NCBI RefSeq assembly: GCF_001194135.2
Contig: NC_068982.1
Span: forward strand, 150,453,149 to 150,489,690
DNA: 36,542 bases
Reading direction: 5' to 3'
Source: Octopus bimaculoides
Lineage: Eukaryota
Shown here: piece by piece, positions 237-29,869 of the stretch
How positions within the stretch are numbered: position 1 is the stretch's first letter
How the letters are laid out: every line of letters starts with the position of its first letter
Notes under the pieces: model-generated
Database searches by the model: none
The model's input: only the letters and a program-made list of their open reading frames with translations
Told to the model about the DNA's origin: nothing
Program-made: the position numbers and the translations under genes

Positions 237-901
237 TATTGCGTTGAGTCAAACGTTTTCCAGTATTTTGGTAATTTATTTGCTTTGTCAAGTTACAACA
301 AAAGCAGCCCAGCATTCAAAGTAGAGGCCAATGTGTTGCACCATCTGAAATCACCTTTCTGCCAGTTCTTTAATCCCATTCTGATAGCAGTTCTTGTCTT
401 GCGAGGCAAAGAACTCCTTCACTAAAACTACCACCGCCTCACAGGAAATGAGGCATGGATTGGAACAAGAAATAATCTGAGGGAGCTAGATTTGGACAAT
501 ATGCTGGGTTTGATTTCCTCAAGCTCCTTGGTGTTTAATCTGTGTTGTTCGAGCAGTGTGAGGTCTTGCTTCCTGTTAACTAATGCCAGGGTATTTTTGC
601 TGCACAATGGCATACATCTGTTCCAGCTGTTTAGAGTACAGGTTGGCAATGATGATTTGACCATCCAGAATGAATTTGTAGTGGATTATCCACCAGATGT
701 GGAGCATCAACTTGTATTTGAAACGCCCGTATTTGGTGACAAGTTCTGGAAGCTGGACCCTGCTTATGCCTGTTAGGATTGCAGAAAAATATCTTCCTCA
801 GATTGTTGTTCTGGTCCATGACTTACTTCCTGCACTTGTGACACTTCATCAACCAAGGAGCTGGAGGCTTCAGTGAAGGCATTTTTTGACTCAACACAAT
901 A
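237..901 (-). mobile_element. Internally deleted mariner (Tc1/mariner) transposon with both TIRs
   Basis: TIRs TATTG(C/T)GTTGAGTCAAA at 237-253 and, reverse-complemented, at 885-901 (16/17 identical, including terminal TA). Minus-strand frameshifted transposase remnants ARPHTARTT, PAYCPNLAPSDYFLFQSM and KEFFASQDKNCYQNGIKELAER*FQMVQHIGLYFE. Confidence 0.88.
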
Positions 902-10300: not shown

Positions 10301-13300
10301 TCAATATAATGAGTAGGCTACTTAAACTTCAGCGAGCAGGCATAAGCAGAGTCATCTATTTTGCTTCATCACAAACAACTTAGGATATGATGTATGAATA
10401 ATTTCATATTGTTATGCATACCCAGGAAGAACTTGCCTTCCTCTTTGAAGTTAAAAAATATTCAGCTGTTGTGAGCTTTTTATAAGACCCACAACAAAAT
10501 ACTGTTGCTAATCAAGGTTGTTGCTGCAAATAGACAGTCACTTAACTGCATCGATGAGAAAGGGCACCTGACTCATTAGTATGGAGTTTTTAACCAACAC
10601 AGTCACAACTTCAGAAGGGTGGTCTCCACAACCTATCTTCTCTACTGATGCTACAATGGTCTTTGTTCATTGTTCTGCTGGTCCCATGCAACCTTACCTC
10701 TTGCCATTCATATAGGATATACTCTCCACCCACCACCTTATCTGAATGCAAGCTTTCTACAGTCATTGGTTTTCTGATTTTTAAGAATTTTATCTGCCTC
10801 AAATGGCTCGTGAAGGACATTGGGTACAGTCCCTTCTTTGACACTAATTTAAAAAAAGTTAGTCAACTGGAAGTCAGACAAGGTTTACTGAGGAATGAAA
10901 ACAAGAGATAAATTAAACTAACTGTTAGAATGAGAAAAATTTGTATAAAAAAGAAATTATTTGTAGAAAAAGTTGCAAAAATGCTGTAATGTGAAAAGCA
11001 AAATTAAGAATAAAGTTTATCTAAAAAGAAATAATTACTGTGAGGTGGTTCTTCATCTTCAGAAGAAGAAGAGGTTGAACTTTCAACAGTGTCTTCATGA
11101 GTCCTATAATGGCGTCGCTGTTGAATACCTAATTTTACAGGAGAAGCAGCCTTTGCAGATTCATGATTATGACCTTGCTTATTATCCTATGAATAGACAA
11201 CATGTTATAATGTAAAAACACTAAGCATATAAACCAAACTGAAGTGAAGATAGAGAGAAAGCAAGCATGAGAAACAGAAAAGATACCTATCCAATACATA
11301 TATACCTTAAAATTCAAATGAGATAATGGCTGCTGTCAAACTGGTCTCTTTGCAGTCAAAGAAAAATTGTGCTCCCCATTATATAAAGGTAAAGTTAAAA
11401 TATATTTTGTTCATAAAATTACATAACAATATACATAAAAAAATTTTGTAACAAAAAAGTAAAGACAAGACATTCAATAAAAATCTCCACAGAAAAAATG
11501 TTAAGAAGATTATTTCATGAATACATAAACAATGCTAAAATAAAAAAATATTAAAAATCTAAACAAACAATATAGAATGAACCTGAAAAAAAAAAAAAAG
11601 CCAATAATTGTATTTCATGGATTGTTTTGTAATGAAATTCTTGGAATAATATTCTAGCCTTTTCTTTAAGAGGCAGATAAATAAAACACTTAAAGTATTT
11701 GTAACCAAGGATTTGTTTGAAATATATCTTCTAAAACTGTCATTATTACTGAATTAAAAAAATATTCAATATATTTTCCACATAAAAGAGCTATTATTGC
11801 AATTTATATATACAATGTTTAATTATTTGAAAGGCTTTAAAATGATACTGAATATTTTCATTTTCTCTTTACAAACTATACTATTAGCATAAAAATGTTG
11901 ATTAAATTTTTTAATTTTCACATTTTATTAATGCTTGAACTGAAACATTTTCTGCTCTCTTGGACAGACAACTTACAGTGCTAGAGTGATAAAACAGACT
12001 GCAAGGGAATATACATTTGTACTATCAAGCCAAAAACAAAAACAGATGTGGTAAATTATTTGGTATGTAACAAACAATTTGTACAAAAAAAAAAAAAAGT
12101 TGTGAAGAAGCAGTCATTTCTGTTGTGGTAATATTAATCAAATCCCAGCATCTTTGTTTTGTATCTTTAAATACACAGCTTTCATACAATATGACCATTA
12201 GTTATACTGCTTTTAACAGAGTAACAGATTCTTGTCAATTGGAATAAGTAGCCAACCATGTAATAGATTCAAGCTGGATCGATATCACTTCTCTTGCCGA
12301 GAAATTCTTCTTAGGTCTGTGAATCACCAATGAAGATAATGATGGGACTGACAAAGAAAAAGTTATACAATGCTAAAAATGAAAAATTATATTTTTTCTT
12401 TAAAATTCAAAATAATATAGGTAATGACATAAACAAGAAAAAAAATTATTTATTCAACATCAAAACCCTTAAAGTTCTGGCACAGTGAGTTTGACATTCA
12501 AGTTTTCAAGATAATCTTAATATATATATGCTGAAAAGCACACATGCAAAACACAAAGTATTTCAAATGATATAATTAAAATACTTTAGTAAAAATCATG
12601 AAAACAGTTATACACGCAGGCCATGAATTTATGAACAACTATGGATATATGACCTAGTAATGTGATTGACATCTAATTAGTATATATAAAAAAAAAGAAA
12701 AAAGCATTCTCCATTACTATATAAGCTGTCTGATTGCACTGACTGCTTTTTATCTTGACTTAGCTCCTGAGTTTGTGTCTCATTACACCTGTTTTTTTTT
12801 TGCAGCTCACATCTCCCATTATTTCTCGGAAGTACTTTGCACACCAGCTTAGCATTTTTATATTCAACTTGCACACTGCCAATCAAATGCAACAAACCTG
12901 TACATAGTATATATAGAACATGTGCACGATCCATTTTCCTAACCATGAAAGAGAGAAAGAATATGCAATGGGACTGAGGAATACAGGAAGATCACTTTTC
13001 CAGATGAGTATAGCAATTATAATTTTGGGTGATGAAAAGAGAATATCATGTAGATCAAATTTGACCAGAAGTTTTGAGTTCGTTAATTGTTAATTTCTTT
13101 ATGTATTCTCTAATTATCCCTTTGTATCTCAATGTCTGATCTAAAACAAATAGGACACAAAAGTTAAAATGCTGCAGGTCCATTCATAAGAATCGGAAGC
13201 AAAAGGGATAAAACTGAAGCCAAAGAAAACCACTTGTTTCAGTATATATATATAAAAAACCCCAAAAAACTCAAGCTAGAAGGGAATAAAAATCAATAAT

Positions 13301-16300
13301 AAAAAACCAACGTGAAAAACAAATAGCATTTAACCCTTTGATACCAACTCACTTGAGACTGCCTCTTATGTCAATACAAACTTTCTGTTTTAATGTAATC
13401 TAATTAAAACTCTCCATCAAATTTCATGCTAAATTTATATTTCAAATCAGCAGCTTAATAACAAAAGTAGAGTATTTTCGGAGAAATATAGTATCCTAAG
13501 GGTTAAACCACCTATCTATTACCTACTATCTACAAAAGGTGGAAAGGTTAAAAAAAGAACAGTCAAAAATGTATAATTTACTCATATCCTTTTACTTGTG
13601 GCCATATTCCATATTTAGAGTAATTGCTGTTGACACATCAAACCAAGATGTGATATTTTCCTATTTAGAACTGATGATGACCTGGCTGATAAATTGCCTT
13701 TGTTAAGCAGAGGGAGGGAAAAGAATAACAAAGTAGAACTTGATAAAAAGTAATATTAAAGATTATACCTACTGTAAGAAAAACAAAAACAAAATGAGAA
13801 TGGTGCAATAGGCATGAGGTTTTGGATCTTGTCTGTAGGGCTTGTTACTATTTTCCAGAAATTCAAGATGAACTTAAACTTAGAAACTATTGCCAGGCAA
13901 ATTTCTGAAGTTTACCAGTTATTTTGAATTTTTCAATTAGAAATAGATACTCTACAAAATTGGCAGAATACATTATATAAGCTATTACTACTACAGTGTA
14001 TGTGTGTCAGGTCCCACTGCCTGTCACCATGGGCAAGTGCTTTCTACTATAGCCCCCACTGGCTGACCAGATACTTGGACATAGATTTGGCAGACAGAAA
14101 GTGAAGCTCATAATGTGCATACAAGTATGTGTGTACCTGTATGCAAGCATTAGCTTCTTGCCAGTGTCATATCCTACAAAAGGGTCATAGAAAAACTCTC
14201 CTTTGACATTCTCTCGTCTAATCCATGCAAACATGGAGAAGCAGACGTTAAAATGGCGATGAGGATGATATGTATTGGGTTGGCAACTAAGTTCCTGCAG
14301 TTTTTTTTTAAATTTTGGAATCTATTTCTTTCGAGAATTCTATTTTTGAATCATTTTGGAATGTATTTTGTTTATTTTTTCTAGTTAATTTTAGTTAATT
14401 TTTGTTTATTTTCAGATCATTAAAATGGGATGTCAAGTTAAGAAAAACGAGCATTTTTGACACCTCCTTCTTTTTGCTTTTAATCAAGGTTCTAAGGCCG
14501 CAAGTGTTGCTTGCGACATTTGTGCTGTCTATGGAGAGGGTGCCATAACTGAAAGAACCGCTCATGATTGGTATGCCACGTCCAGTTGAGTTCGATGAAG
14601 AGCGATTAAACCAACTTTTGCACAAAAATTCTCACCAAACAACAAGGGAACTGGCAGAGAAAATGGAATGCCCGTACACTGCTATACTAACACAGACACC
14701 TCTCATATGCAGATAATGTCTAGCACTTTTAGCTCACTTGTGTTTCTTATAAAAAAAATTAAAAAATCTAAATTTCAATGTTAGTAGATTTAGGTAACAG
14801 GAATTAACAACTCTTTGCAAACAATGAGCGAAATCTAGAGACTTCATCCTACAGATGATCCTATAGTTAATAAATCCTGAATACCACAACTCAGATCCCA
14901 ATGTGGTCACTGAATATACTGATTTCCTAGCTAATTCTTTCATACACACTCAACGAGATCACTCCATAAATGATACAAGATTTTTTTTGTTCTACTACTA
15001 TTGAAACCCTTGGCCTTTGGTATGTTGACTGTCACACCATTATTCCACACTCACACATTATGTATTGTAACACAAATATGCTTTTGGAAAAGCAGTAATA
15101 ATCAGAATCCATTGACAACAGCCTTGTAAACAAAGTCAACAACACAAAGTCTATCAATAACCACAATACATCATCATAGGTACTATACAAATTGCATTTT
15201 TTAAAAAGTATGATCTCTATATGAATGACATCAACCAGCTCCAATGGCAAATTTTCTCTTAGGATGTTGAAACTACTGAGAGACTACATCTCAATTTTAC
15301 TCTAGGCAACACTTTTGACATTGGTGACACTGAAAATGAGGGGGAAAAGAACTAAGAAAAAGCTTAGACTTATCCCTAAAAGTTTTGGAAAAAGTAACAG
15401 TAACATGTGTGCATACAAACAGAGAGAATACTGAGAGATAAAGCAACACCAAAAAGTTATCTAATGACCAGTTTGGAGAAATAAGTACAAGTAAAGAGGA
15501 GCAACTCATATCTAGGCAACAGAAAGACTAGTTGAAGTGATCTAACTCAATGCCATCAACTATACAACAAATATACAAATAGGGTAGATTTTTACCAATT
15601 ATATCATGCATCATCTACTTACACTCACTACGACTGATCAGCAAAATCTAACTTATTTTTAACCCTGTACCATTAAGAGACAACTATAAAATTCCAAATG
15701 CTATTACTCACTTTAACAGACCACACACACACACATTACAACCAGATTCACCTGACTTTTCTACAGTAAATGTAACTGATTAGTTACATTCTACTTCTTC
15801 CTAGATCCATTCAATAAGCATGTCTCTCCTCTATTCCAAAGGTTTCAGGAATTTCTACCTGCTCACTTTCCTCTCTATATACGAACAAACTCACCTGCTT
15901 GGAAGGCTGAAAATACTCAGGAGTACACTGCCTCATACTTAGACTAAAGTAAACAAGCTCAATACTGATAACATCTTTTAGGCATGAATATTCAAATGCA
16001 TTTATGCTCATTCACACAGAACTAATTGTCTTATACAACAACTTTTCAACTATCCCAATCATTCTGAAATGACAAAGTGAAAACTTAGTTAACTCCTCCT
16101 TCTTTAACTGAACACGCCTCTCTGCATAAGAATCAAACTGGTTAACAAACAGACCATCAAACTATGTTGTATCTAACCAAACATACATAAAAATATCTAT
16201 ACTATCATGCAAACAGTAAAGAATGACTAAAAAAAATGCAACATGGATGGACACATATTTAATAAAAAGACAACACATAAACATACATTTTACTCTTTTC

Positions 16301-18235
16301 TCCAGGGTACATGAAATCTAATTGTTTCAATGTACTCACACAGCAAGCATTTGCTGATACAATTGATTAACTATACTGGTGAAAATTTATTAAAGAAATT
16401 ACACAAAAGCAACTTACCTTGGCAATCTGTTATTATGATAATCTGTGAGCAAACATCCAGCAGTGACAAGTTTTCAATCTTTCTGAAACTGTCCTGGTTT
16501 TAACATAAATTGGCCTCCAGTTTCCGTTTTTGGAGAGGTTTCAACACTGGATGTGTGCTTCCAAAAATAGAATAACTTCAACAAATCAGCAGTGTCTCTG
16601 TTTGGTTTCCAGTAAAAAAGAAATAGACTAACTTAGGGTGAAATGCCAAAAAAGCTAATAATATTGTAGCATTAATCACTGCATTGTTTAGCAGACAAGA
16701 GAATAGTACTGATAAATTAGATTAATTGTATCTTGCAGTCTTAATTAAATCCTACTCTAATATTAGTTAACCTCTAATACAAGGAAACTGTCTAACCATT
16801 GTTATTAAAAAAACTAATTAAGTGACCTTAAAACCAAAAATTGATCAGCCGAAAAACAGTAAACCTGTAAATTGCTGCTTTCTTTTTATAAAAGAAATTC
16901 AAAATTTCAACATCAAAAGTAGTCACAAACTTAACTTGCATTCTCCTACACATAAGAATTTCCATAAGAGATGGCAAGTACAAGAGAATTTTGGATTTAA
17001 ATTGAACTAAAGAAATATCATACATTAAAAATATTCTAGTCAGGCTTCCAATAAAAAAAACAATAAAAAAAACAAACCATTTAAAATATTTTCTTATTTT
17101 CCTTTTTTCTCCATCTAAAATGATTAGGATTTCAACACAAAAGAAAACATTTAAATGTCTCACCTGTCCAAAAAACACTAAATATATCACAATAAGAACA
17201 AATATATAACAAACAAACACCTTCAAAGAGCTAAACTTAGAGAGTATTTGTAAGAAAACATCATTCAGTTTCATTCTTTGTTAATGCTTTATTAAGCATT
17301 TATTTTTTTTCTGCATATTTTCCAAATCCAGTTTTTTTGTTTCCAATTTCATGTCTACAAAACAATGCTTTTCTTATGTCTACTTCCATCAGTATGGTGT
17401 TATTTCAATAAGGTGGTAACCAATAGTCTCACTTGTTTGTTATTTATGCTCTCCACTCACCTGTCCTGGAAGCTGCATTAAAAACATTCAGAACTGGGTC
17501 TAAAACGACTGGATCACTCTGCTCTACCCTACTCCCATTTAGGTTGGAAATCTACTTGTCCAACTCCAATTAAAACCACAGCTACTTAACATGAAGTATT
17601 TTATTGTGCATTGACAATGTACTTCTTCAAACTTCTATTCCATTTCTCTTCAAAACAAGACAACTGACCAACTACCTAGGTATATTTATTTTCATTCCCA
17701 CTAATTTCACTTACCCGCTGAAATTAGTCTTTTTTTTTTTTTGATAAAACAGGAAAGCTAATTTTATTCAAACTAGAATTTATGGAGCAGCAACAAAAGT
17801 GGGAAACTAGATCCGTCAATCTTCATTGAAAATGAACCTAGCGTATTGTTTCTGAGTATTCACTTGCACAATATGCTGTTACACCTTGTTTAGAAATTCT
17901 TATGAAGACAGGCCTGGAAAAAGATTTCATTATCATATAAAGGGACATGCAATGTTAAATAAATTTAATTCATTTATAAAGGAAATTGAAATCAATTTGG
18001 AGTATTCAAATTAACTGTAGGGAAATAATCATGATAAAAAGAAACATTTCTGTCTAGATCATCAGCACAATACCAAGATGTTACATATTCGACTGTACCA
18101 ACAATCCCAGTGACAAGCAGCCATTAAATAATTCTATAAAGCTAAGAGTAAAGACGATGGAATTATACTCAAAATAAATACAATCCAAATTTATGTTGTT
18201 TGAGAGGAAAAGTGAGTTTCTTAACACTCTAGCTA

Positions 18236-18289
<54 letters not shown>

Positions 18290-20626
18290 NNNNNNNNNNN
18301 NNNNNNNNNNNNNNNNNNNNNNNNNNNNNNNNNNNNNNNNNNNNNNNNNNNNNNNNNNNNNNNATATATATATATATACACACACACACACATATATATA
18401 ATGTAATTGTCATTGTTAAAAAGTTACAATATTCTAACAATGAATTTTTTTTTGGGGGGGGGGGGTAATATTTCCCATCATCTTTGCTTTTCAGAGAAAT
18501 TTGAAATTAATAAAATCTGGAAACACAAAAAAATAATAATCTAACTGATTGAAACTATCTAGTGAAAAGACAAAATGACTTAGTCTATGATTTAATTGTA
18601 TACAAACATTTTTCCTTTAAATGAAGTTAAAAAGCCTGGGTCAATAACTGGAGAAACTATCATACAAGCCTGTTTCAACCGAATTACTTACCCTTCTGGA
18701 ATTTTCAGTAGTGCGCTTTGATTTACCAGCTGAACTTGAACTTGATGAAGACTCAGATGAACTACTGGAAACAGAACTGGAGCTTGGAGACCTGGTAAGT
18801 AAAATATTGTTTGTGGTGTAGGCATGGAGTTTTACATTATTTTAGGGTAGATGAAAGGGAAAATAGTGATGCTGTTATCATTAAAAAAAGGAAATGCATC
18901 TAAAACTATATCACAGACTTAGCATGTCAGAAGAATACACCTACTTCATGGAACTTGCTGCCAAGAAAATGATAATAATGACAACTTGTTTAATTATTGA
19001 GGACCTAATTACTTATGAAGTATCATGCAGTAAAAGAAATTTTAACTTTATCAGAACATATATGATTTTAAGCTTTGTTACAAATAAGTTGGCCTACTTT
19101 GGATGGTTGCTTTATGGAATAAGAGCACCACTAAAGTGGCCAGGATTTTTTTTTCCTGATAACTTCTTCAGAGTTCTATTGTTTAAAACAGGAAAGATTT
19201 GGGGTGGAGGAAAAGGTTTGTTTTCGTTTTTTAAATTTAAATACTGGGCCCTTTCAAACAACCATTTGTGATTTTTCTGTATTTTCCTTTTTATTTGTCT
19301 GTTGAAACAACAGAGATTATGATTCTGCAGAATATTCTTTTCAAATTTTTTAAAGTCAAAAACAAACAAGTGATGCATAATCATGTTGTATAGAAAGGTG
19401 TAGCAGTATCATTTAAAACTGCCACGAAGACAAAGATGTCTTAGAGAGAAGCAACTACAGAGGAATGAAACTACTGGATCAGACTAAAGGTCACAAAAAG
19501 AGTCTGAACACAACTGATCTGTGAGTAGACCTAGCTGAAATGTAGTTTAGCTTTGTATTAAGAAGAGATCCCACAGATACCATCTTCCTAACGAAAGAAT
19601 TGAACAAGAAATATGTGACTAAGAATAAATTGCTATTCCCGACTTTCACTGATCTGGAGAAGCCATATGACAGGGTACCATGTTCAGTAGTTTGGTGGTT
19701 TAGATGAATGGCTTGTGAGGGATATACAAGCTATGTACAAAGATACAGTAAGCAGAGAGTTGACAACTATTTCAGTGATGAATTTAGCATGAAGGTAGTT
19801 CACCAAGGGCCAGTCCTCTCCTATTCATAAATCCTACAGGATCTTACAGAGGAGTTTTAAGATTGAATAACCCTGGAAATTCCTATATACTCCTGATCTA
19901 GTTCTTACAGCTGAATCTATAGGGGAATTAGAAGAAATTCCAGACATGGACACTGAACCTAAAATCAAGAGATCTCAAAGTAAACTTAGTAAAGACTAAG
20001 GATTTTAGTAAGAAAAAAGACATGATCCTGGCATCTTCAAGATAGTGGCCCTGCTTGATATATTTAGGAAAAGAGGTATTAACTCCATACATTATACCCA
20101 ATGTAAGCTATGGATAAATAAGTAGTGTAGTGAAATCACATGTGCAAATAGGGAAAGTAAGCTTCAGATGTGATAAATGCACTGAAAAGATTGGAAAAAC
20201 GTCCAAGAGAATCTTTCACTACTGACAATAAAAGTCTTTTTCCCCAAGTAAAATGCAGATTGTATGATGCTTGAGTTAAAAATGTGATGTGACATGATAG
20301 TGAGATATGGGCTTTCAATGCAGAAGACTGAAAAGAAATAAAGTGAGCATGGTCAACTGGTTGTGCAATGTAAATGTGCACAAAGACATAATACAAATGT
20401 GCTGAGAGAAAAACGGAGTAAGAGGAATCAGATGTAGTGTGCAAGAAAGAAGACTGAACTGGCATGGTCATGTGATGCAAATGGATGAGGAAAGCTGTAT
20501 AAAGAAGTGCTGATCACTTGACATGGATGGAAATTGTAGAATAGTGAGGTCGAACTGCTGATTGCAGTTCCTTGAACCTCATGAAGGATTCGACAAGAGA
20601 CTGAGATGAATAGCAATATGCAGTTC

Positions 20627-20677
<51 letters not shown>

Positions 20678-23600
20678 CACACACACACACACACAGAACC
20701 ACATTAATAGCTTAGGAGTGAAATTTAGGATTTCTCGGTTTTCTGTGAATCGATTTTGATAAAACTTTTCCCAACTGGTCTGCACACTATCGTTATGTTT
20801 CCATTATTCTGTGTAACATCCTTTCCTTTTTTATTTCAGATTCTTCAGTTTTTGGGTGAACCTCCTCTCTAAGAACAATGGGACATGGGAAAGGCCTTCA
20901 CAACAAAGAAAGGTCTGTCATCATCATGCAAAGTGCTAAAGGCATTTCTCTTCATGTCATTGCATAGAAGTTAGGTCATCATGTGGACACAGACGGTTCC
21001 TGAAGGACCCTTCATTTCTTTAACTGCAGCTTTTCTTCTTGAGTCTACTGATCTTTCTCACAACCTAGAGGCATTTCACTTGATATCCATCATACTTAAT
21101 ACCGTCCTATCCAACCACATCTTTGACCCTCCTCCTATCCATTAAACCACCCCAGCTTTACCATGTTTCCCAATCTCTCTGTTCATGCTTGCCTTTCCCT
21201 CCCTCTTGCAACCTGTCCATCCATTTATCACTTCTCTCTCTCTAATCTTTCTGTCTACTGCACCAGCATTACCATTCTGCTACTCTTTCATACCATGCAT
21301 CACTGGTCACCCCTTATCTACTGTTCACTACATCCACCCTTCAACACTATTCAATCCTCCAGTGGTCACCTACACTTCCCTGTCTCCCCTTATTCACTGT
21401 TTATTCATTATATTTACCCTATCACCAATTCCCCATCGCTAACCATATCTCACTATTCAACACTCTTGCAGTTATTCTGCCCCTGTTCATTTCCATTTAT
21501 CTTGTACCTGGTCTACACAGATATCTCGTCACTACATTTCTTCTTTGATCACCCCTACCTTTCTTCTAAAATATGAATGGCCACATGGCTCTGGTGCCTT
21601 CTCTCACACATTAACTCCTTTTCCCTTAGGAAAAGCTGCTTCTTTTAGGGTTTATAGTCTTGCAAGCTGCATAATGACTCCACTAGTGCTGGTGGCACAA
21701 AAAAAAAAAAAGCACTCAGTACACAATGTACAGTGGTTGGCATTAGAACAAACATCCAGATGCAGAAGCCATGCTTAAGTAGACAGAAGAGCACAATGCA
21801 GTCTTTGGACCCATAAGATCTTGTCTAACTGTCCAACCCATGCCAACATGGAACATAGGCATCAAATAATGATGCCGGTATAAACTCCAAAATCTAATAA
21901 TACAAAGCATTTTGTTTGTGAATGAAAATAATTTGTAACTGAAAGAAATACCTGATGGTTTTACCACATTCCAAATGATTATTTGTAACTTTTAAAAATT
22001 CAGAAACTGAAAGAAAATTGTTACACAGGAGAGTAATGTAAAATTTTTTTGTGTATAAATGCATGAAAAGTGAAGTTGAGCATTGTACCTTGTCCTTTCA
22101 AAGTTTACTACTTAATTAATGCCTAACAAAGGAAAGGGGAAACATGCAACAGATTACACATCACTTCATAGGTGGTTGAAATTTGTTTTGGGAGATACCA
22201 AGTGTAATCTTACAAGAGTACACCTAAAAACTTGAAAGCATACTCAAACTGATCCTGTACAATTAAGAAATATAAATATGAACTCACTATTTGAGTGGAA
22301 GTTTGTGTGTGTACATATCGTGTGCATTGTTTTTTGCAAAGAAGCCTACTAAAGCAATAGATCAAACCTTCTTTTGGTGGGCTCCTTTAGAAAACTTAGG
22401 CACATTGTGTATGTGTGTTTATCATCATCATCATCATCGTTTAACGTCCGCTTTCCATGCTAGCATGGGTTGGACACAAATTTTAACAAAAGTTTTGTAC
22501 TTAGAATGTATAAACAGGCATACTTGTATACATACATACATACACACACTCTCCAGAGTTTAACATCATTACCCATGTAATCATTCTCTTTCAGTTTCTG
22601 AATTTTCACAATAAATCATCGCATTAAAAATGTATTTTTTGCAAATAATCTGGAATGTGAGGGAAAAATCAGATATCCTGTTTCATTTATCACTTTATTC
22701 AAAGACAAAATGTTTGTTATTGAGCATCTCAGTGTTTACTGCCTGAAATAGAAATTTGTCAAATTGAAAAAGCTGTACAAAAATATGTGCAAGCTCTTCA
22801 AGAAAAAGACATAAGTACTGACATCGCAGAACTATAGAGGATAAACAGCTGCTTTAATTTACTTAACAACTCACTTCAAATTAATGTTTAATTTTCTATA
22901 TTAGGTCACCACTTATTTATGTTTATGTAACTTTGTGTATAGTTGTTCTTGTATGTGTCTCATTATGTTACTTGAGTGTTAAGTTCAAAAAGTGAATACA
23001 TAATGTAGCTGTCATGTTATGACATGAACAAACATAAAAATATCATAAGGATATATTGTTGCATTATACTGAATGGTATTTTCCAATATTGAACAATGAA
23101 AAATGCTGTTACAATCTCTCTGAAGCCTGCTGTCTTAATATACTTCCAATATTTTTTTTATATTCTGTAACTGAAACCTCAGTTATTGCACTTACTGAGA
23201 TATAAGCACATTTACTATATTAAGATTCTCCATACATCACTTCAGATATAATAAACCATTATGGTCTATCTTATGGAAAACATTTCCAGTATACCCTTAG
23301 CACATACACAATTTTTGTGCATACCTGGGTATGTTGTCTCTGAAATAGCTTACCAATAAATTTCACGAGACAAAGCAAAAAAGTCAGGGAATAACATTTT
23401 TGTGATGTTTGTATGTCTATGACAGTTACTAACCACATGCACAACACTGCTTTTAACATAAGCATAGAAAAAACCCTAAATCTTTTTTTTGTTTACAATG
23501 TTACCAATTTTTTCAACAATCTGACAAGTAAATAACATAAGCATTTGAATAAATAAGCTTGTTAGGTATGTTCTGGCCCAATCATTACAAGATGCCAAAA

Positions 23601-28400: not shown

Positions 28401-29869
28401 TAGCAGGAAGCATCCAGCCTTAGAAACTATATCAATATGAAACTTAGAGCTAGTCCTCTAATCCATCTAAGAGGGCAGTAACTCAAAAATAATAACTGAC
28501 TGTGATGACCTAACTCATGCCAGCATTAAATGCTGATGTAAAATGATGATGATTTATAACTTGATTCCATACAGGATCTAAAGTAAATTCAGAAGTCCTT
28601 ATAGAAAACTGACTTTCCAGACCATTCCAACATCACAACTCAATACCCCCGCCCAACCAATGTAACATGCTCATTTTTTCTTTAAGTCCCTCACACATAA
28701 CAGTTCCCGTTCACTAGCAGATAGTATTTGTGTGTAAATGCTATGCTAATGTTACTATTTAAGGGGAGAAGATAAGAGTAGTGTGCAACAAATTACCATA
28801 AATGATGCAAGAGGAACAAAGGTCAAGAGAAACACATACCACGGTTGAGAATGTCTTAAAATGTCCCGACCATGTGGTTTATACCACCTTTGAGAGAAAG
28901 GTTGTTGCTCATCGATGGCAGCGACGACCAATAGCATCCAGCCGACATAATAGTAAGAAATTAATCCTGCAAGTGAGCAGCTTTGCCAGGACTTTGACGG
29001 GACAGGGAAGGCGTTTATAATTTGATCATCTCTAATTGTGAGAGGAAACAGCCAAACATCAGTACATTACCATAAACAACCAGAAACATATAAATACAGA
29101 TATGATATAAATACATTATAGAATTCAGTAGATTCTATATATACAAATGATTATACAGTTTATACGATAAAGAACAACATTATGAAATCTATTAAAAGAA
29201 ATGCATGTACACAAGTCACATATCAATTTTACATGTCAAATAATTCATTCAATTAAATGTTATCTACTGATATTACATGCATGTGACAAATATATAACAA
29301 GAACAAACCGTTAAAGCACTTACTTTGTCCTCAAGTTGATTATATACAAATTCAACAATAACATCATCCTCAATCCCTAAAAGTTCAGTGATTCTCTGGG
29401 AAATCCATGGTTTTAGAGTTTCTACATTCACTTTATTCATATCAACCTAAAATTATAGAAATAATTATTATATTAATAAATGATTGATCCAACAAGACAA
29501 TAACCAATAAAAATAATAGTAATACTTTTTAAATGCTTTTATCACATTTTTAAAATATGTGAAGAATCATTTCATTATATGAATGCTCTTGATTGTTGAA
29601 AAAAAATTTTTTTTTAAATAAAATTATCAATATCAACAAGATCTAATGAAGATAGAACAAACTCTCTAATCAAATAGAAAAATAACATTTGAAAGTAAAC
29701 TTTTAAGATATTTTTTAATCTGCTTTTAAAATCTGTAAACAAATTTTTACTCATCAGTTTCCAATAATATATACATTACCAAAAGTTCCTGGCGGTCATT
29801 TATAGTGGATTAATGGCCTTAAAGAGAAATTACATACCATTATACAATTCTATACCAAATTTTGAATTT

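What the first reader, a model, noticed from the sequence alone, without database searches (positions are those of the whole stretch)
15049..17714. Strand-specific cluster of consensus 5' splice sites in intron 9: candidate decoy/poison-exon autoregulatory module
On the SRRM1 sense strand GTRAGT occurs at 15049, 15617, 15623, 15706, 15889, 16334, 16412, 17455 and 17709. That is 9 in 2.7 kb, versus roughly 1-2 expected from base composition, none seen on the opposite strand in this interval, and only about six non-exon copies in the ~29 kb outside intron 9 (counted by eye). Further near-consensus donors lie at 15751, 15866 and 17163. This stretch has no recognisable TE. In vertebrate splicing-factor genes (e.g. 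SF3B1, OGT, SNRNP70), intronic decoy exons with multiple 5' splice sites drive intron retention or NMD as feedback. An equivalent module in a mollusc SRRM1, placed after the PWI and first RS block (469 aa), is not something I know to be described. It could sense U1/SR-protein levels and toggle full-length, retained or truncated SRm160.
Basis: partly seen in the sequence, partly recalled or inferred. Interest (0 to 1): 0.75.

Follow-up and report, generated by a model that had tools for sequence, protein, structure and literature searches.

The report
Conserved splice-donor cluster in SRRM1 intron
A stretch in the middle of one intron of a mollusc splicing-factor gene (SRRM1) holds far more perfect splice-donor signals than chance gives, and a related species conserves them together with a nearly unchanged 290-base block, which fits a hidden non-coding "poison" exon that could throttle the gene's own output, although no transcript that uses it has been seen yet.

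Summary
All nine GTRAGT copies sit at the stated coordinates on the minus (SRRM1 sense) strand, and none is on the opposite strand. Local composition predicts 3.3 copies, not 1-2, so the hexamer excess alone is modest (P about 0.005 locally, 0.01-0.02 after scan correction).

The signal strengthens on the full 9-nt consensus. Seven sites match at least 8 of 9 positions within 2 kb. These include the only three perfect matches in the whole 36.5-kb window (P about 0.001-0.009 in three controls).

I recovered orthologous intron DNA from a related species (L020, 88.6% identical). All seven comparable donor cores persist there, and two perfect 9-mers are unchanged. A 290-nt block (16723-16435) shows only 2 differences and ends 17 nt before the perfect donor at 16417. 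A conserved AG lies upstream of it. The exon 16678-16418 that these sites predict is 261 nt long, and its first in-frame codon is TGA.

The best reading is a conserved non-coding cassette (poison or decoy) exon module with satellite pseudo-donors. No transcript shows it in use, and mRNAs of a more distant relative join exon 9 directly to exon 10.

In passing, I found a transcript-supported conserved poison exon in intron 3 (29031-28840).

If real, this is a new member of a known kind.

The parts
11187..18691 (-). Intron 9 of the SRRM1-like gene (phase 0). It lies between exon 9 (18791-18692) and exon 10 (11186-11039) and contains an assembly gap of 74 N at 18290-18363.
   Evidence: Exon model. 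Exon 9 and exon 10 borders and their direct junction are confirmed by mRNA contigs L001, L011 and L015.
17709..17714 (-). Donor-like site CGG|GTAAGT (8/9). It is TGG|GTAAGT in the relative. It sits in a 71-nt stretch with 2 or fewer differences (17728-17658).
17455..17460 (-). Perfect donor consensus CAG|GTGAGT (9/9). The 9-mer is identical in the relative.
17158..17163 (-). Donor-like site CAG|GTGAGA (8/9), abutted by ttttttggacag. It is CAA|GTGAGA in the relative, so it is weakened there. The 66 nt downstream are nearly unchanged.
16435..16723 (-). Ultraconserved block: 290 alignment columns with 2 differences against the related species, where the background is 80-89% identity. It has no stable fold, no Rfam match and no long ORF.
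   Evidence: (Poisson P 2.5e-12).
16418..16678 (-). Candidate conserved cassette (poison) exon '9a', 261 nt. The acceptor is ...ttctcttgtctgctaaacaatgcag|TGATTA, with 1 difference in 66 columns. The donor is AAG|GTAAGT. The first in-frame codon is TGA. An alternative acceptor at 16442 (tgtttgctcacag|ATTATC) would give a 25-nt frame-shifting exon (26 nt in the relative).
   Evidence: The acceptor scores are weak to average for this gene (-1.5 and 2.7). There is no transcript evidence.
16412..16417 (-). Perfect donor consensus AAG|GTAAGT (9/9). The 9-mer is identical in the relative. It closes the conserved block.
16334..16339 (-). TGT|GTGAGT, 78 nt downstream of 16417. It becomes GTAAGT in the relative, so the R position swapped and the consensus was kept.
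15889..15894 (-). Perfect donor consensus CAG|GTGAGT (9/9). It is also the only good juxtaposed 3'ss/5'ss (recursive-type) site. In the relative the hexamer is kept but the exon side is lost (CCA|GTGAGT).
15746..15751 (-). CAG|GTGAAT (8/9). The 9-mer is identical in the relative.
15706..15711 (-). AAA|GTGAGT (8/9). It lies beyond the reliable end of the orthologous contig.
15617..15628 (-). Tandem GTGAGT-GTAAGT pair with a poor exon side (GTA|, AGT|). No orthologous data are available.
15049..15054 (-). TGT|GTGAGT in (TG)n-like context. A low-quality site.
17715..18014 (-). Second candidate cassette exon, 300 nt. The acceptor ttatttccctacag|TTAATT is conserved, the donor is at 17714, and an in-frame stop falls at codon 3. 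It overlaps the conserved stretch 18169-17877 (13 differences in 296 columns).
   Evidence: This part is speculative.
15895..16063 (-). Third candidate PTC exon, 169 nt. The acceptor is ttgtcatttcag|AATGAT (tag in the relative) and the donor is at 15894.
   Evidence: This is the weakest candidate, because the donor is degraded in the relative.

Best explanation
The middle of intron 9 carries a conserved, non-coding splice-site module.

Its core is an exon-like element, most likely 16678-16418. That is a 290-nt almost invariant block which follows a conserved AG and is closed by a perfect, conserved 5' splice site (AAG|GTAAGT). Around it lie further U1-complementary donors. Some are conserved (17460, 17714, 15751, 16339) and some are lineage-variable (15894, 17163).

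Inferred mechanism:
1. U1 snRNP, together with SR proteins and SRm160 complexes, recognises these sites.
2. When splicing-activator activity is high, the cryptic exon is spliced in between exons 9 and 10.
3. Intron 9 is phase 0 and the exon starts with TGA (or shifts the frame from the 16442 acceptor). The message therefore stops at or shortly after residue 469 and should be removed by NMD. Alternatively, the exon engages the intron ends non-productively and delays intron removal.
4. Either outcome lowers the output of full-length SRRM1, giving negative feedback.

Shown here: the statistical excess of donors, their independence from repeats, conservation of the block and of the donor cores, and the in-silico premature stop.

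Inferred only: any use of the sites in RNA, NMD or retention, and feedback.
For: - Donor excess. 9 GTRAGT against 3.3 expected. Seven sites match 8 or more of 9 positions, and all three 9/9 sites of the window lie here. P is 0.001, less than 0.0025, and 0.009 and 0.0013.
- Independent origin of the sites, with no TE remnant.
- Orthologous contig L020 is colinear with 18252-15730. A block of 290 columns has 2 differences, P 2.5e-12.
- Donor 16417 and both candidate acceptors, 16678 and 16442, are conserved.
- 7 of 7 donor cores keep GTRAG. Six are identical and one has an R swap, against a background hexamer conservation of 0.40-0.51.
- The relative keeps 5 sense and 1 antisense GTRAGT, and two 9/9 sites.
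- The block is not a structured RNA or a known RNA family, and it is full of stops in the exon frame.
- The same gene demonstrably uses a conserved PTC cassette exon in intron 3, so this regulatory logic operates at this locus.
- Precedents exist. SF3B1 intron 4 has six short cryptic exons with consensus site pairs, and multiple competing sites are typical of decoys (PMC6097662). SNRNP70 exon 7a depends on U1 bound at several cryptic 5'ss (PMC3798272). Mouse Srrm1 is listed among genes with detained introns or PTC cassettes (PMC5000506).
Against: - No transcript evidence exists for any junction into or out of the module. L001, found independently of this junction, joins exon 9 directly to exon 10. 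L011 and L015 do so too, but they were retrieved through an ORF that spans that junction, so they are biased.
- Candidate acceptors score only -1.5 and 2.7 on a crude scale on which the gene's real acceptors range from -3.5 to 7.6.
- Strong acceptors are not enriched in the interval.
- The invariant block stops 17 nt before the donor and starts 45 nt before the acceptor, so its borders do not coincide exactly with the proposed exon.
- 9-mer conservation of the donors (3 of 7) is no better than background (0.40), and 15894 and 17163 are weakened in the relative.
- Only one comparison species is available, and its identity and library type are unknown.
- Most pseudo-5'ss in animal introns are not conserved and are presumably inert. 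In human, 578,872 were found and 3,712 are conserved (PMC13100119).
Confidence: 0.45

Rival explanations
1. The donor cluster as such has no function. The conserved 290-nt block is some other constrained element, for example an intronic transcriptional enhancer, a DNA-level element, or an unclassified RNA. The surrounding donors are inert pseudo-5' splice sites that arose in G+T-rich sequence and survive because the two species compared are close.
For: - The sense strand is G+T-rich, which triples the expected hexamer count and fully explains the strand asymmetry.
- 2% of composition-matched permuted motifs reach an equal cluster before thinning.
- 9-mer conservation is not above background, and two top sites degrade in the relative.
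- There is no acceptor enrichment and no transcript evidence.
- Most pseudo-5'ss are unconserved (PMC13100119).
Against: - After thinning, the permuted-motif P values are 0.009 and 0.0013, and jointly 0 of 3000.
- The only three perfect sites of a 36.5-kb window fall within 1.6 kb.
- The invariant block is flanked by a conserved AG and, 17 nt beyond its end, by a conserved perfect donor in the sense orientation.
- In splicing-factor genes, ultraconserved intronic blocks are typically poison exons. This is general knowledge and is echoed in PMC13228269.
Confidence: 0.3
2. The donors are U1 snRNP landing sites that suppress premature cleavage and polyadenylation at cryptic poly(A) signals in this AT-rich intron (telescripting). 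When U1 is limiting, a truncated PWI+RS1 isoform would be produced.
For: All six sense-strand A[AT]TAAA hexamers in the interval lie 24-167 nt downstream of a strong donor. The position test gives P about 0.006-0.012, but it was chosen post hoc.
Against: - The PAS hexamer density here is unremarkable.
- Other PAS-rich parts of the gene (the 26-kb and 32-kb bins) have no donor cluster.
- This reading does not explain the 290-nt invariant block.
Confidence: 0.08
3. Intron 9 is removed stepwise through recursive (ratchet) splice sites at 15894 and perhaps 17163.
For: 15894 is a juxtaposed acceptor and donor (tattttcagccttccaagcag|GTGAGT). Its acceptor score of 5.1 is in the top 2.6% of AGs in the intron, and its donor is 9/9. 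The AG|GT junction at 17163 scores 2.1 as an acceptor.
Against: - The intron is only about 7.5 kb.
- Finding one AG|GT junction that scores this well as an acceptor among the five AG|GT donors is expected by chance about 12% of the time (my estimate).
- In the relative, both junctions lose the abutting G or AG (CCA|GT and CAA|GT).
Confidence: 0.04
4. The donors belong to alternative first exons of an internal promoter in intron 9. Such transcripts would encode N-terminally truncated SRRM1 or a nested non-coding RNA.
For: The cluster consists of donors without a matching excess of acceptors. It also shows sense-strand G-over-C skew, which recalls promoter-proximal U1-site enrichment.
Against: - CpG observed/expected is 0-0.3 throughout, and no island is present.
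- The gene's real promoter-proximal region shows no such cluster.
- There is no transcript evidence.
Confidence: 0.04

Closest known systems
Ultraconserved poison (PTC) cassette exons of SR and SR-related splicing-factor genes (e.g. SRSF3, TRA2B), coupled to NMD
   Same: - The host is a splicing-factor gene.
- The block is non-coding and far better conserved than the surrounding intron.
- It is a few hundred nt long and bounded by an AG and a strong donor.
- There is an immediate in-frame stop.
- The same gene has a second such exon with transcript support, in intron 3.
   Different: - Inclusion, NMD sensitivity and autoregulation are untested here.
- Conservation is shown against a single related species only.
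- The acceptor is weak.
- The element is surrounded by an unusual number of extra strong donors.
SNRNP70 (U1-70K) intron 7 / exon 7a module (PMC3798272)
   Same: Several cryptic 5' splice sites cluster in a conserved intronic region of a splicing-machinery gene. In SNRNP70, U1 binding to them is additive and activates an upstream alternative 3'ss, giving a PTC isoform. This is the closest match to the 'U1 sensor' idea.
   Different: In SNRNP70, sites A-C lie closely downstream of one 3'ss. Here the donors are spread over about 2 kb with spacings of 40-750 nt. U1 binding and U1 dependence are untested.
Decoy exons in retained introns (SF3B1 intron 4, OGT, ARGLU1, DDX39B; PMC6097662)
   Same: - The intron is longer than 1 kb and belongs to a splicing-factor gene.
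- It has several conserved blocks with consensus splice-site motifs.
- It has multiple competing sites.
   Different: - Retention of intron 9 is unknown.
- SF3B1 decoys are 29-56 nt exons with clear site pairs. Here acceptors are not enriched, and only two or three pairs can be proposed.
Conserved pseudo-5' splice sites acting as U1-dependent intronic silencers (ENOX1/Enox UCP-5'SS; PMC13100119)
   Same: These are intronic, apparently unused, consensus 5'ss that are conserved between species and are proposed to work by binding U1.
   Different: Those are single 9-nt elements next to an alternative exon and are conserved across animals. Here a cluster is seen, and conservation is tested at short range only.

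Membership tests
Poison cassette exon coupled to NMD in a splicing-factor gene | Cassette exon bounded by a usable 3' and 5' splice site | tested here: inconclusive
   The perfect, conserved donor is at 16417. Conserved AGs are at 16678 and 16442, but their acceptor scores are only -1.5 and 2.7. No junction data exist.
Poison cassette exon coupled to NMD in a splicing-factor gene | Inclusion introduces a premature stop upstream of later exon junctions | tested here: met
   Tested in silico only. Intron 9 is phase 0. An exon starting at 16678 begins with TGA. A 25-nt exon starting at 16442 shifts the frame and gives GGA TAA in exon 10 (sequence). Five coding exons follow.
Poison cassette exon coupled to NMD in a splicing-factor gene | Conservation well above the surrounding intron | tested here: met
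   290 columns show 2 differences against 80-89% background identity in one related species.
Poison cassette exon coupled to NMD in a splicing-factor gene | The inclusion isoform exists and is stabilised when NMD is blocked, and it responds to the level of the encoded protein | not testable with these tools
   No read-level RNA data are available. mRNA contigs of a more distant relative show only the exon 9-exon 10 junction.
Decoy exons that promote intron retention (SF3B1 i4 type) | The host intron is longer than 1 kb and is retained or detained in polyadenylated nuclear RNA | not testable with these tools
   Length is met (7.5 kb). Retention is unknown. L020 is an unspliced, colinear contig, but its library type is unknown.
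Decoy exons that promote intron retention (SF3B1 i4 type) | Conserved cryptic exons with paired consensus 3' and 5' sites | tested here: inconclusive
   Two or three pairs can be drawn: 18014/17714, 16678 or 16442/16417, and 16063/15894. Strong acceptors are not enriched.
Decoy exons that promote intron retention (SF3B1 i4 type) | Multiple competing splice sites at or near the decoy | tested here: met
   Seven donors matching 8 or more of 9 positions lie within 2 kb. 16417 and 16339 are 78 nt apart. 15894, 15751 and 15711 lie within 183 nt.
SNRNP70 exon 7a-type U1-sensing module | Several cryptic 5'ss closely downstream of one alternative 3'ss, bound additively by U1 | tested here: inconclusive
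   The geometry matches only loosely, with spacings of 40-750 nt. U1 binding is not testable here.
Recursive splice site (ratchet point) | Conserved juxtaposed polypyrimidine-AG|GTRAGT in a very long intron | tested here: not met
   Only 15894 qualifies in the window. The AG|GT junction is lost in the relative (CCA|GTGAGT). The intron is about 7.5 kb.
U1 telescripting sites (U1-PAS axis) | Sense-strand 5'ss motifs placed upstream of cryptic poly(A) signals whose use rises when U1 is blocked | tested here: inconclusive
   The six PAS hexamers lie 24-167 nt downstream of donors, with a post hoc P of about 0.01. Cleavage-site data are not available.

The most novel reading that the evidence does not exclude
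Mollusc SRRM1 may be controlled by a two-tier unproductive-splicing circuit. The first tier is an ancient poison exon in intron 3, directly after the first PWI exon. It is seen in transcripts of a relative, has a homologous start in another mollusc, and has an analogous stop-bearing insert in oysters. The second tier would be a module in intron 9, where an ultraconserved cryptic exon is embedded in an array of U1-complementary donors. That array would act as a graded sensor of U1 and SR-protein activity and would switch between full-length mRNA, an NMD isoform and a detained intron.
Probability: 0.15. Interest if true: 0.7.

Novelty: new member of a known kind. Interest (0 to 1): 0.5.

Why it matters
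Feedback by unproductive splicing is well documented for vertebrate SR proteins and snRNP proteins. It is hardly explored in lophotrochozoans, and I found nothing on it for SRRM1 at this position.

If the intron-9 block is a used cassette exon, together with the transcript-supported intron-3 exon it would show that cephalopod SRRM1 is under layered splicing feedback. It would also give two short, precisely located elements to test by RT-PCR, antisense blocking or minigenes.

The dense array of strong, partly conserved donors without matching acceptors would also be a natural case for studying how U1 binding inside an intron affects its removal.

If the sites are unused, the locus is still a clean example of a constrained intronic block of unknown function in a core splicing gene.

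Tried and rejected
- **Repeats and TEs.** No internal or dispersed repeat explains the sites. Intron ORFs and three X-masked plus-strand frames gave no Pfam domain. A mariner-like HTH that I suspected at 14549-14713 (+) was not confirmed.
- **Non-coding RNA.** No Rfam family reached gathering or E <= 1 apart from (TA)n noise. There is no tRNA or SINE head. The conserved block has no unusual fold (z = -0.89).
- **E-box reading of CAGGTG.** There are 4 copies against 0.45 expected. I rejected this because the positions after the E-box follow the 5'ss consensus and all copies share one orientation.
- **Internal promoter.** No CpG island is present.
- **Recursive splicing.** It is not conserved.
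- **Searches that led nowhere.** The PWI query and the full-length query found no cephalopod full-length orthologue. My concatenated intron-ORF query was uninformative, because every hit in the other two searches was about 0.55-1.75 times the query length (inferred). The metagenome scans were empty. Exact look-ups of window ORFs were not on record. Run accessions appear in no paper.
- **Acceptor/donor pairing as evidence for exons.** I rejected it as not significant on its own, since about 0.5 acceptors scoring 5 or more are expected within 300 nt upstream of any site (my estimate).


Full report
**Gene context**

The window carries an SRRM1 (SRm160)-like gene on the minus strand. I assembled a 15-exon model that gives a 1040-aa protein with an N-terminal PWI domain and RS-rich regions.
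- Exon 9 is 18791-18692.
- Exon 10 is 11186-11039.
- Intron 9 is therefore 18691-11187 (7505 nt). It includes a 74-N assembly gap at 18290-18363.

mRNA contigs of a related species (L001, L011, L015) later confirmed the exon borders from exon 1 to exon 14, including a direct exon 9-exon 10 junction. In the PWI region, the closest named relative among the database hits was the oyster Magallana gigas (85% identity over the part compared). An unnamed Logan protein reached 94%. This fits a mollusc origin.

**Checking the observation**

All nine GTRAGT copies are at the stated coordinates on the minus (sense) strand. No plus-strand copy lies between 12485 and 18212.

The composition argument needed correction. 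Here the sense strand is G+T-rich (A .31, C .12, G .20, T .38). Dinucleotide-preserving shuffles of the interval therefore give 3.3 sense copies and 0.7 antisense copies. Two things follow:
- The strand specificity is purely compositional.
- The hexamer excess is 2.7-fold, with P = 0.005 locally.

A scan statistic takes the largest count in any 2666-nt span on either strand, using shuffles that preserve local composition. It gives P = 0.01-0.02. Among all 4096 hexamers in the interval, GTGAGT ranks between 1st and 12th for over-representation, depending on the Markov order. CAGGTG, AGGTGA and GGTGAG rank alongside it.

**The signal is stronger on the full donor consensus**

- Seven sense-strand sites in 15711-17714 match MAG|GTRAGT at 8 or more of 9 positions.
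- The rest of the window has only five non-annotated sense sites of that quality.
- The only three perfect 9/9 matches in the 36.5-kb window on either strand are 15894 (CAGGTGAGT), 16417 (AAGGTAAGT) and 17460 (CAGGTGAGT).
- None of the gene's 14 modelled donors is perfect.

Three controls support this:
1. Block-shuffle scan statistic: P = 0.001.
2. PWM sites of 7 bits or more: 5 observed against 0.29 expected, and 0 of 400 scan shuffles reach 5.
3. Column-permuted versions of the motif run on the real sequence, which keeps all real heterogeneity. After removing tandem pile-ups, 0.9% reach an equal cluster and 0.13% reach three perfect sites within 1.6 kb. None of 3000 reaches both.

The flanks of the strong sites share no similarity, and nothing in the interval recurs elsewhere in the window. 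No TE protein remnant, tRNA-like head or Rfam family was found. The sites therefore arose independently.

**What the interval lacks**

- Strong acceptors are not enriched there.
- Only 15894 is a convincing juxtaposed acceptor-donor.
- CpG is depleted throughout, so there is no sign of an internal CpG-island promoter.
- Poly(A) hexamer density is ordinary. However, all six sense hexamers lie 24-167 nt downstream of a strong donor (post hoc P about 0.01).

**Comparative evidence**

The word-indexed protein search appears to return only hits about 0.55-1.75 times the query length, judging. For that reason my first attempt with concatenated intron ORFs was uninformative. The exhaustive representative search then found one 52-aa ORF (P0226) that is 73% identical to the start of a 148-aa intronic ORF. 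Its contig, L020 (Logan, SRR11869384, 2417 nt, present in two samples), is colinear with window 18252-15730 on the sense strand. Identity is 88.6% in ungapped columns and 80% when gaps are counted.

I take L020 to be the orthologous intron of a closely related species. I could not determine the species or the library type. A diverged paralogous copy cannot be formally excluded.

Fate of the donors in L020:

| Site | Window | L020 |
|---|---|---|
| 17714 | CGG\|GTAAGT | TGG\|GTAAGT |
| 17460 | CAG\|GTGAGT | identical |
| 17163 | CAG\|GTGAGA | CAA\|GTGAGA |
| 16417 | AAG\|GTAAGT | identical |
| 16339 | GTGAGT | GTAAGT (still consensus) |
| 15894 | CAG\|GTGAGT | CCA\|GTGAGT |
| 15751 | CAG\|GTGAAT | identical |

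- Six of seven intronic hexamers are identical and the seventh keeps the pattern. The background is 0.51 for all hexamers and 0.40 outside the two long conserved blocks. The binomial P for 6 or more of 7 is 0.07 and 0.019 respectively.
- Full 9-mers are conserved in 3 of 7, which is no better than the background of 0.40.
- The relative still has five sense and one antisense GTRAGT and two perfect 9-mers in 2.4 kb.

The cluster therefore persists, but two of its strongest members are lineage-variable.

**The conserved block**

The most informative result is the identity profile.
- Window 16723-16435 is a 290-column block with 2 differences. The Poisson P is 2.5e-12 even at the ungapped mismatch rate.
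- It ends 17 nt before the perfect, conserved donor at 16417. Conservation decays within about 25 nt after that donor.
- Inside the block lies a conserved AG with an upstream pyrimidine-rich stretch (ttctcttgtctgctaaacaatgcag|TGATTAATG). The first exon base would be 16678, with 1 difference in 66 columns.
- A second conserved AG lies at tgtttgctcacag|ATTATC (first exon base 16442).
- Exon 16678-16418 would be 261 nt, and its first in-frame codon is TGA.
- The 16442 variant is 25 nt (26 nt in the relative). It would shift the frame into a TAA at the start of exon 10.
- The block has no unusual secondary structure (z = -0.89), no Rfam match, and stops in the exon frame.

A second conserved stretch (18169-17877, 13 differences in 296 columns) contains a conserved acceptor-like site at 18014. 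This lies 300 nt upstream of the conserved donor at 17714.

**Interpretation**

These features are the footprint of a conserved non-coding cassette exon of the kind that splicing-factor genes use for unproductive-splicing feedback. The extra donors resemble the competing sites described at decoy exons and at SNRNP70 exon 7a (PMC6097662; PMC3798272).

The inferred mechanism runs as follows. U1 and SR/SRm160 complexes define the cryptic exon. Its inclusion puts a stop at or shortly after residue 469 and sends the mRNA to NMD. Alternatively, non-productive pairing with the intron ends detains the intron. Either outcome reduces full-length SRRM1.

None of these steps is shown. I have no read-level RNA data. 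L001 was retrieved through its PWI ORF and is therefore unbiased for this junction, and it joins exon 9 directly to exon 10. The further contigs do the same, but they were retrieved through an ORF that spans that junction, so they are biased.

I put the probability of this explanation at 0.45. The main rival, at 0.30, is an inert donor cluster next to a constrained element of another kind. Telescripting, recursive splicing and alternative first exons are minor rivals.

**A by-product that bears on the interpretation**

The mRNA contig L001 carries an extra exon between exons 3 and 4. It corresponds to window 29031-28840 (192 nt; acceptor cacaattag|AGATGA; donor GTG|GTATGT).
- It is 93% identical over 193 aligned positions, more than the flanking coding exons (76-89%).
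- It places a stop two codons after exon 3, which gives the 80-aa product P0038.
- L011 and L015 of the same species group skip it.
- The start of this exon is recognisably conserved inside the unspliced intron 3 of another mollusc contig (L003, z = 7.8).
- Oyster transcripts (L002, L005-L010; product P0055 is named Magallana gigas) carry about 1.14 kb of extra sequence directly after exon 3. It begins ...CAG TGA TTC TCT GTC CC and likewise ends the ORF at 79-80 residues.

SRRM1 in molluscs therefore does have a transcript-supported, conserved unproductive-splicing element, and it lies in intron 3. This makes the regulatory logic proposed for intron 9 plausible at this locus. It also removes the need for intron 9 to be the gene's feedback element.

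**Comparison with the literature**

- Human SRRM1 has an NMD-linked 5'UTR exon controlled by RBM17 (PMC9250932).
- Mouse Srrm1 is listed among genes with detained introns or PTC cassettes (PMC5000506).
- I found no description of an SRRM1 element at the position of intron 9 and no cephalopod data.

If real, the module is a new member of a known kind rather than a new kind.

Noticed in passing
window 28840-29031 (minus strand), inside intron 3; L001 283-473: This is a conserved poison cassette exon of SRRM1. The 192-nt exon (cacaattag|AGATGA...CAACCGTG|gtatgt) is present in mRNA contig L001 of a relative, and L011 and L015 skip it. It is 93% identical, more than the coding exons, and it stops the ORF at 80 aa (P0038).
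   Followed up: yes
L003 about 1650-1740; L002, L005-L010 directly after the exon 3 homologue: The start of the intron-3 poison exon is conserved in the unspliced intron 3 of another mollusc contig (z = 7.8). Oyster SRRM1 transcripts carry about 1.14 kb of extra sequence after exon 3. It begins with an in-frame TGA and retains the exon 4 acceptor, which looks like poison-exon use plus partial intron retention. These transcripts were seen in 10 contigs from several runs.
   Followed up: partly
window 17877-18169 (minus strand): A second well-conserved intron-9 stretch shows 13 differences in 296 columns against L020. It surrounds a conserved acceptor-like site (ttatttccctacag|TTAATT, first base 18014), which lies 300 nt upstream of the conserved donor at 17714.
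   Followed up: partly
window 16263, 16391, 17293, 17304, 17605, 17690 (minus strand): Every sense-strand A[AT]TAAA hexamer in the interval lies 24-167 nt downstream of a strong donor. The post hoc P is about 0.006-0.012. This may hint at U1-PAS pairing, or it may be chance.
   Followed up: partly
window 18239-18392: A (TA)n microsatellite flanks a 74-N assembly gap, followed by (AT)n and (AC)n. The true length of intron 9 is therefore uncertain. The orthologous contig L020 also breaks at this repeat.
   Followed up: no
window 21000-21600: This is a C/T-rich low-complexity stretch on the plus strand in intron 8, with extreme GC skew (-0.4). It produces long spurious ORFs.
   Followed up: no
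window 14549-14713 (plus strand): A short stop-free stretch (…HQTTRELAEKMECPYTAILTQ…) reminded me of a mariner/Tc1 transposase helix-turn-helix. Pfam gave no hit at E <= 0.1, so this is unconfirmed.
   Followed up: partly
window 15751, 15894, 17163, 17460 (minus strand): Four CAGGTG E-box motifs occur against 0.45 expected, all in one orientation. Each is the exon-intron junction of a donor consensus, so the E-box reading was set aside.
   Followed up: partly
L001 1000-1719; L011-L019: In the relative's SRRM1 mRNA contigs, the gene caller picked a 237-239-aa ORF in an alternative frame of the RS-rich region. This ORF runs across the exon 9-exon 10 junction. That made it a handle for retrieving 24 more mRNA contigs.
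   Followed up: yes
window 426-773 (plus strand) and the window's first about 1 kb: Open stretches of up to 116 codons lie on the plus strand downstream of the SRRM1 3' end. They may belong to a neighbouring gene.
   Followed up: no
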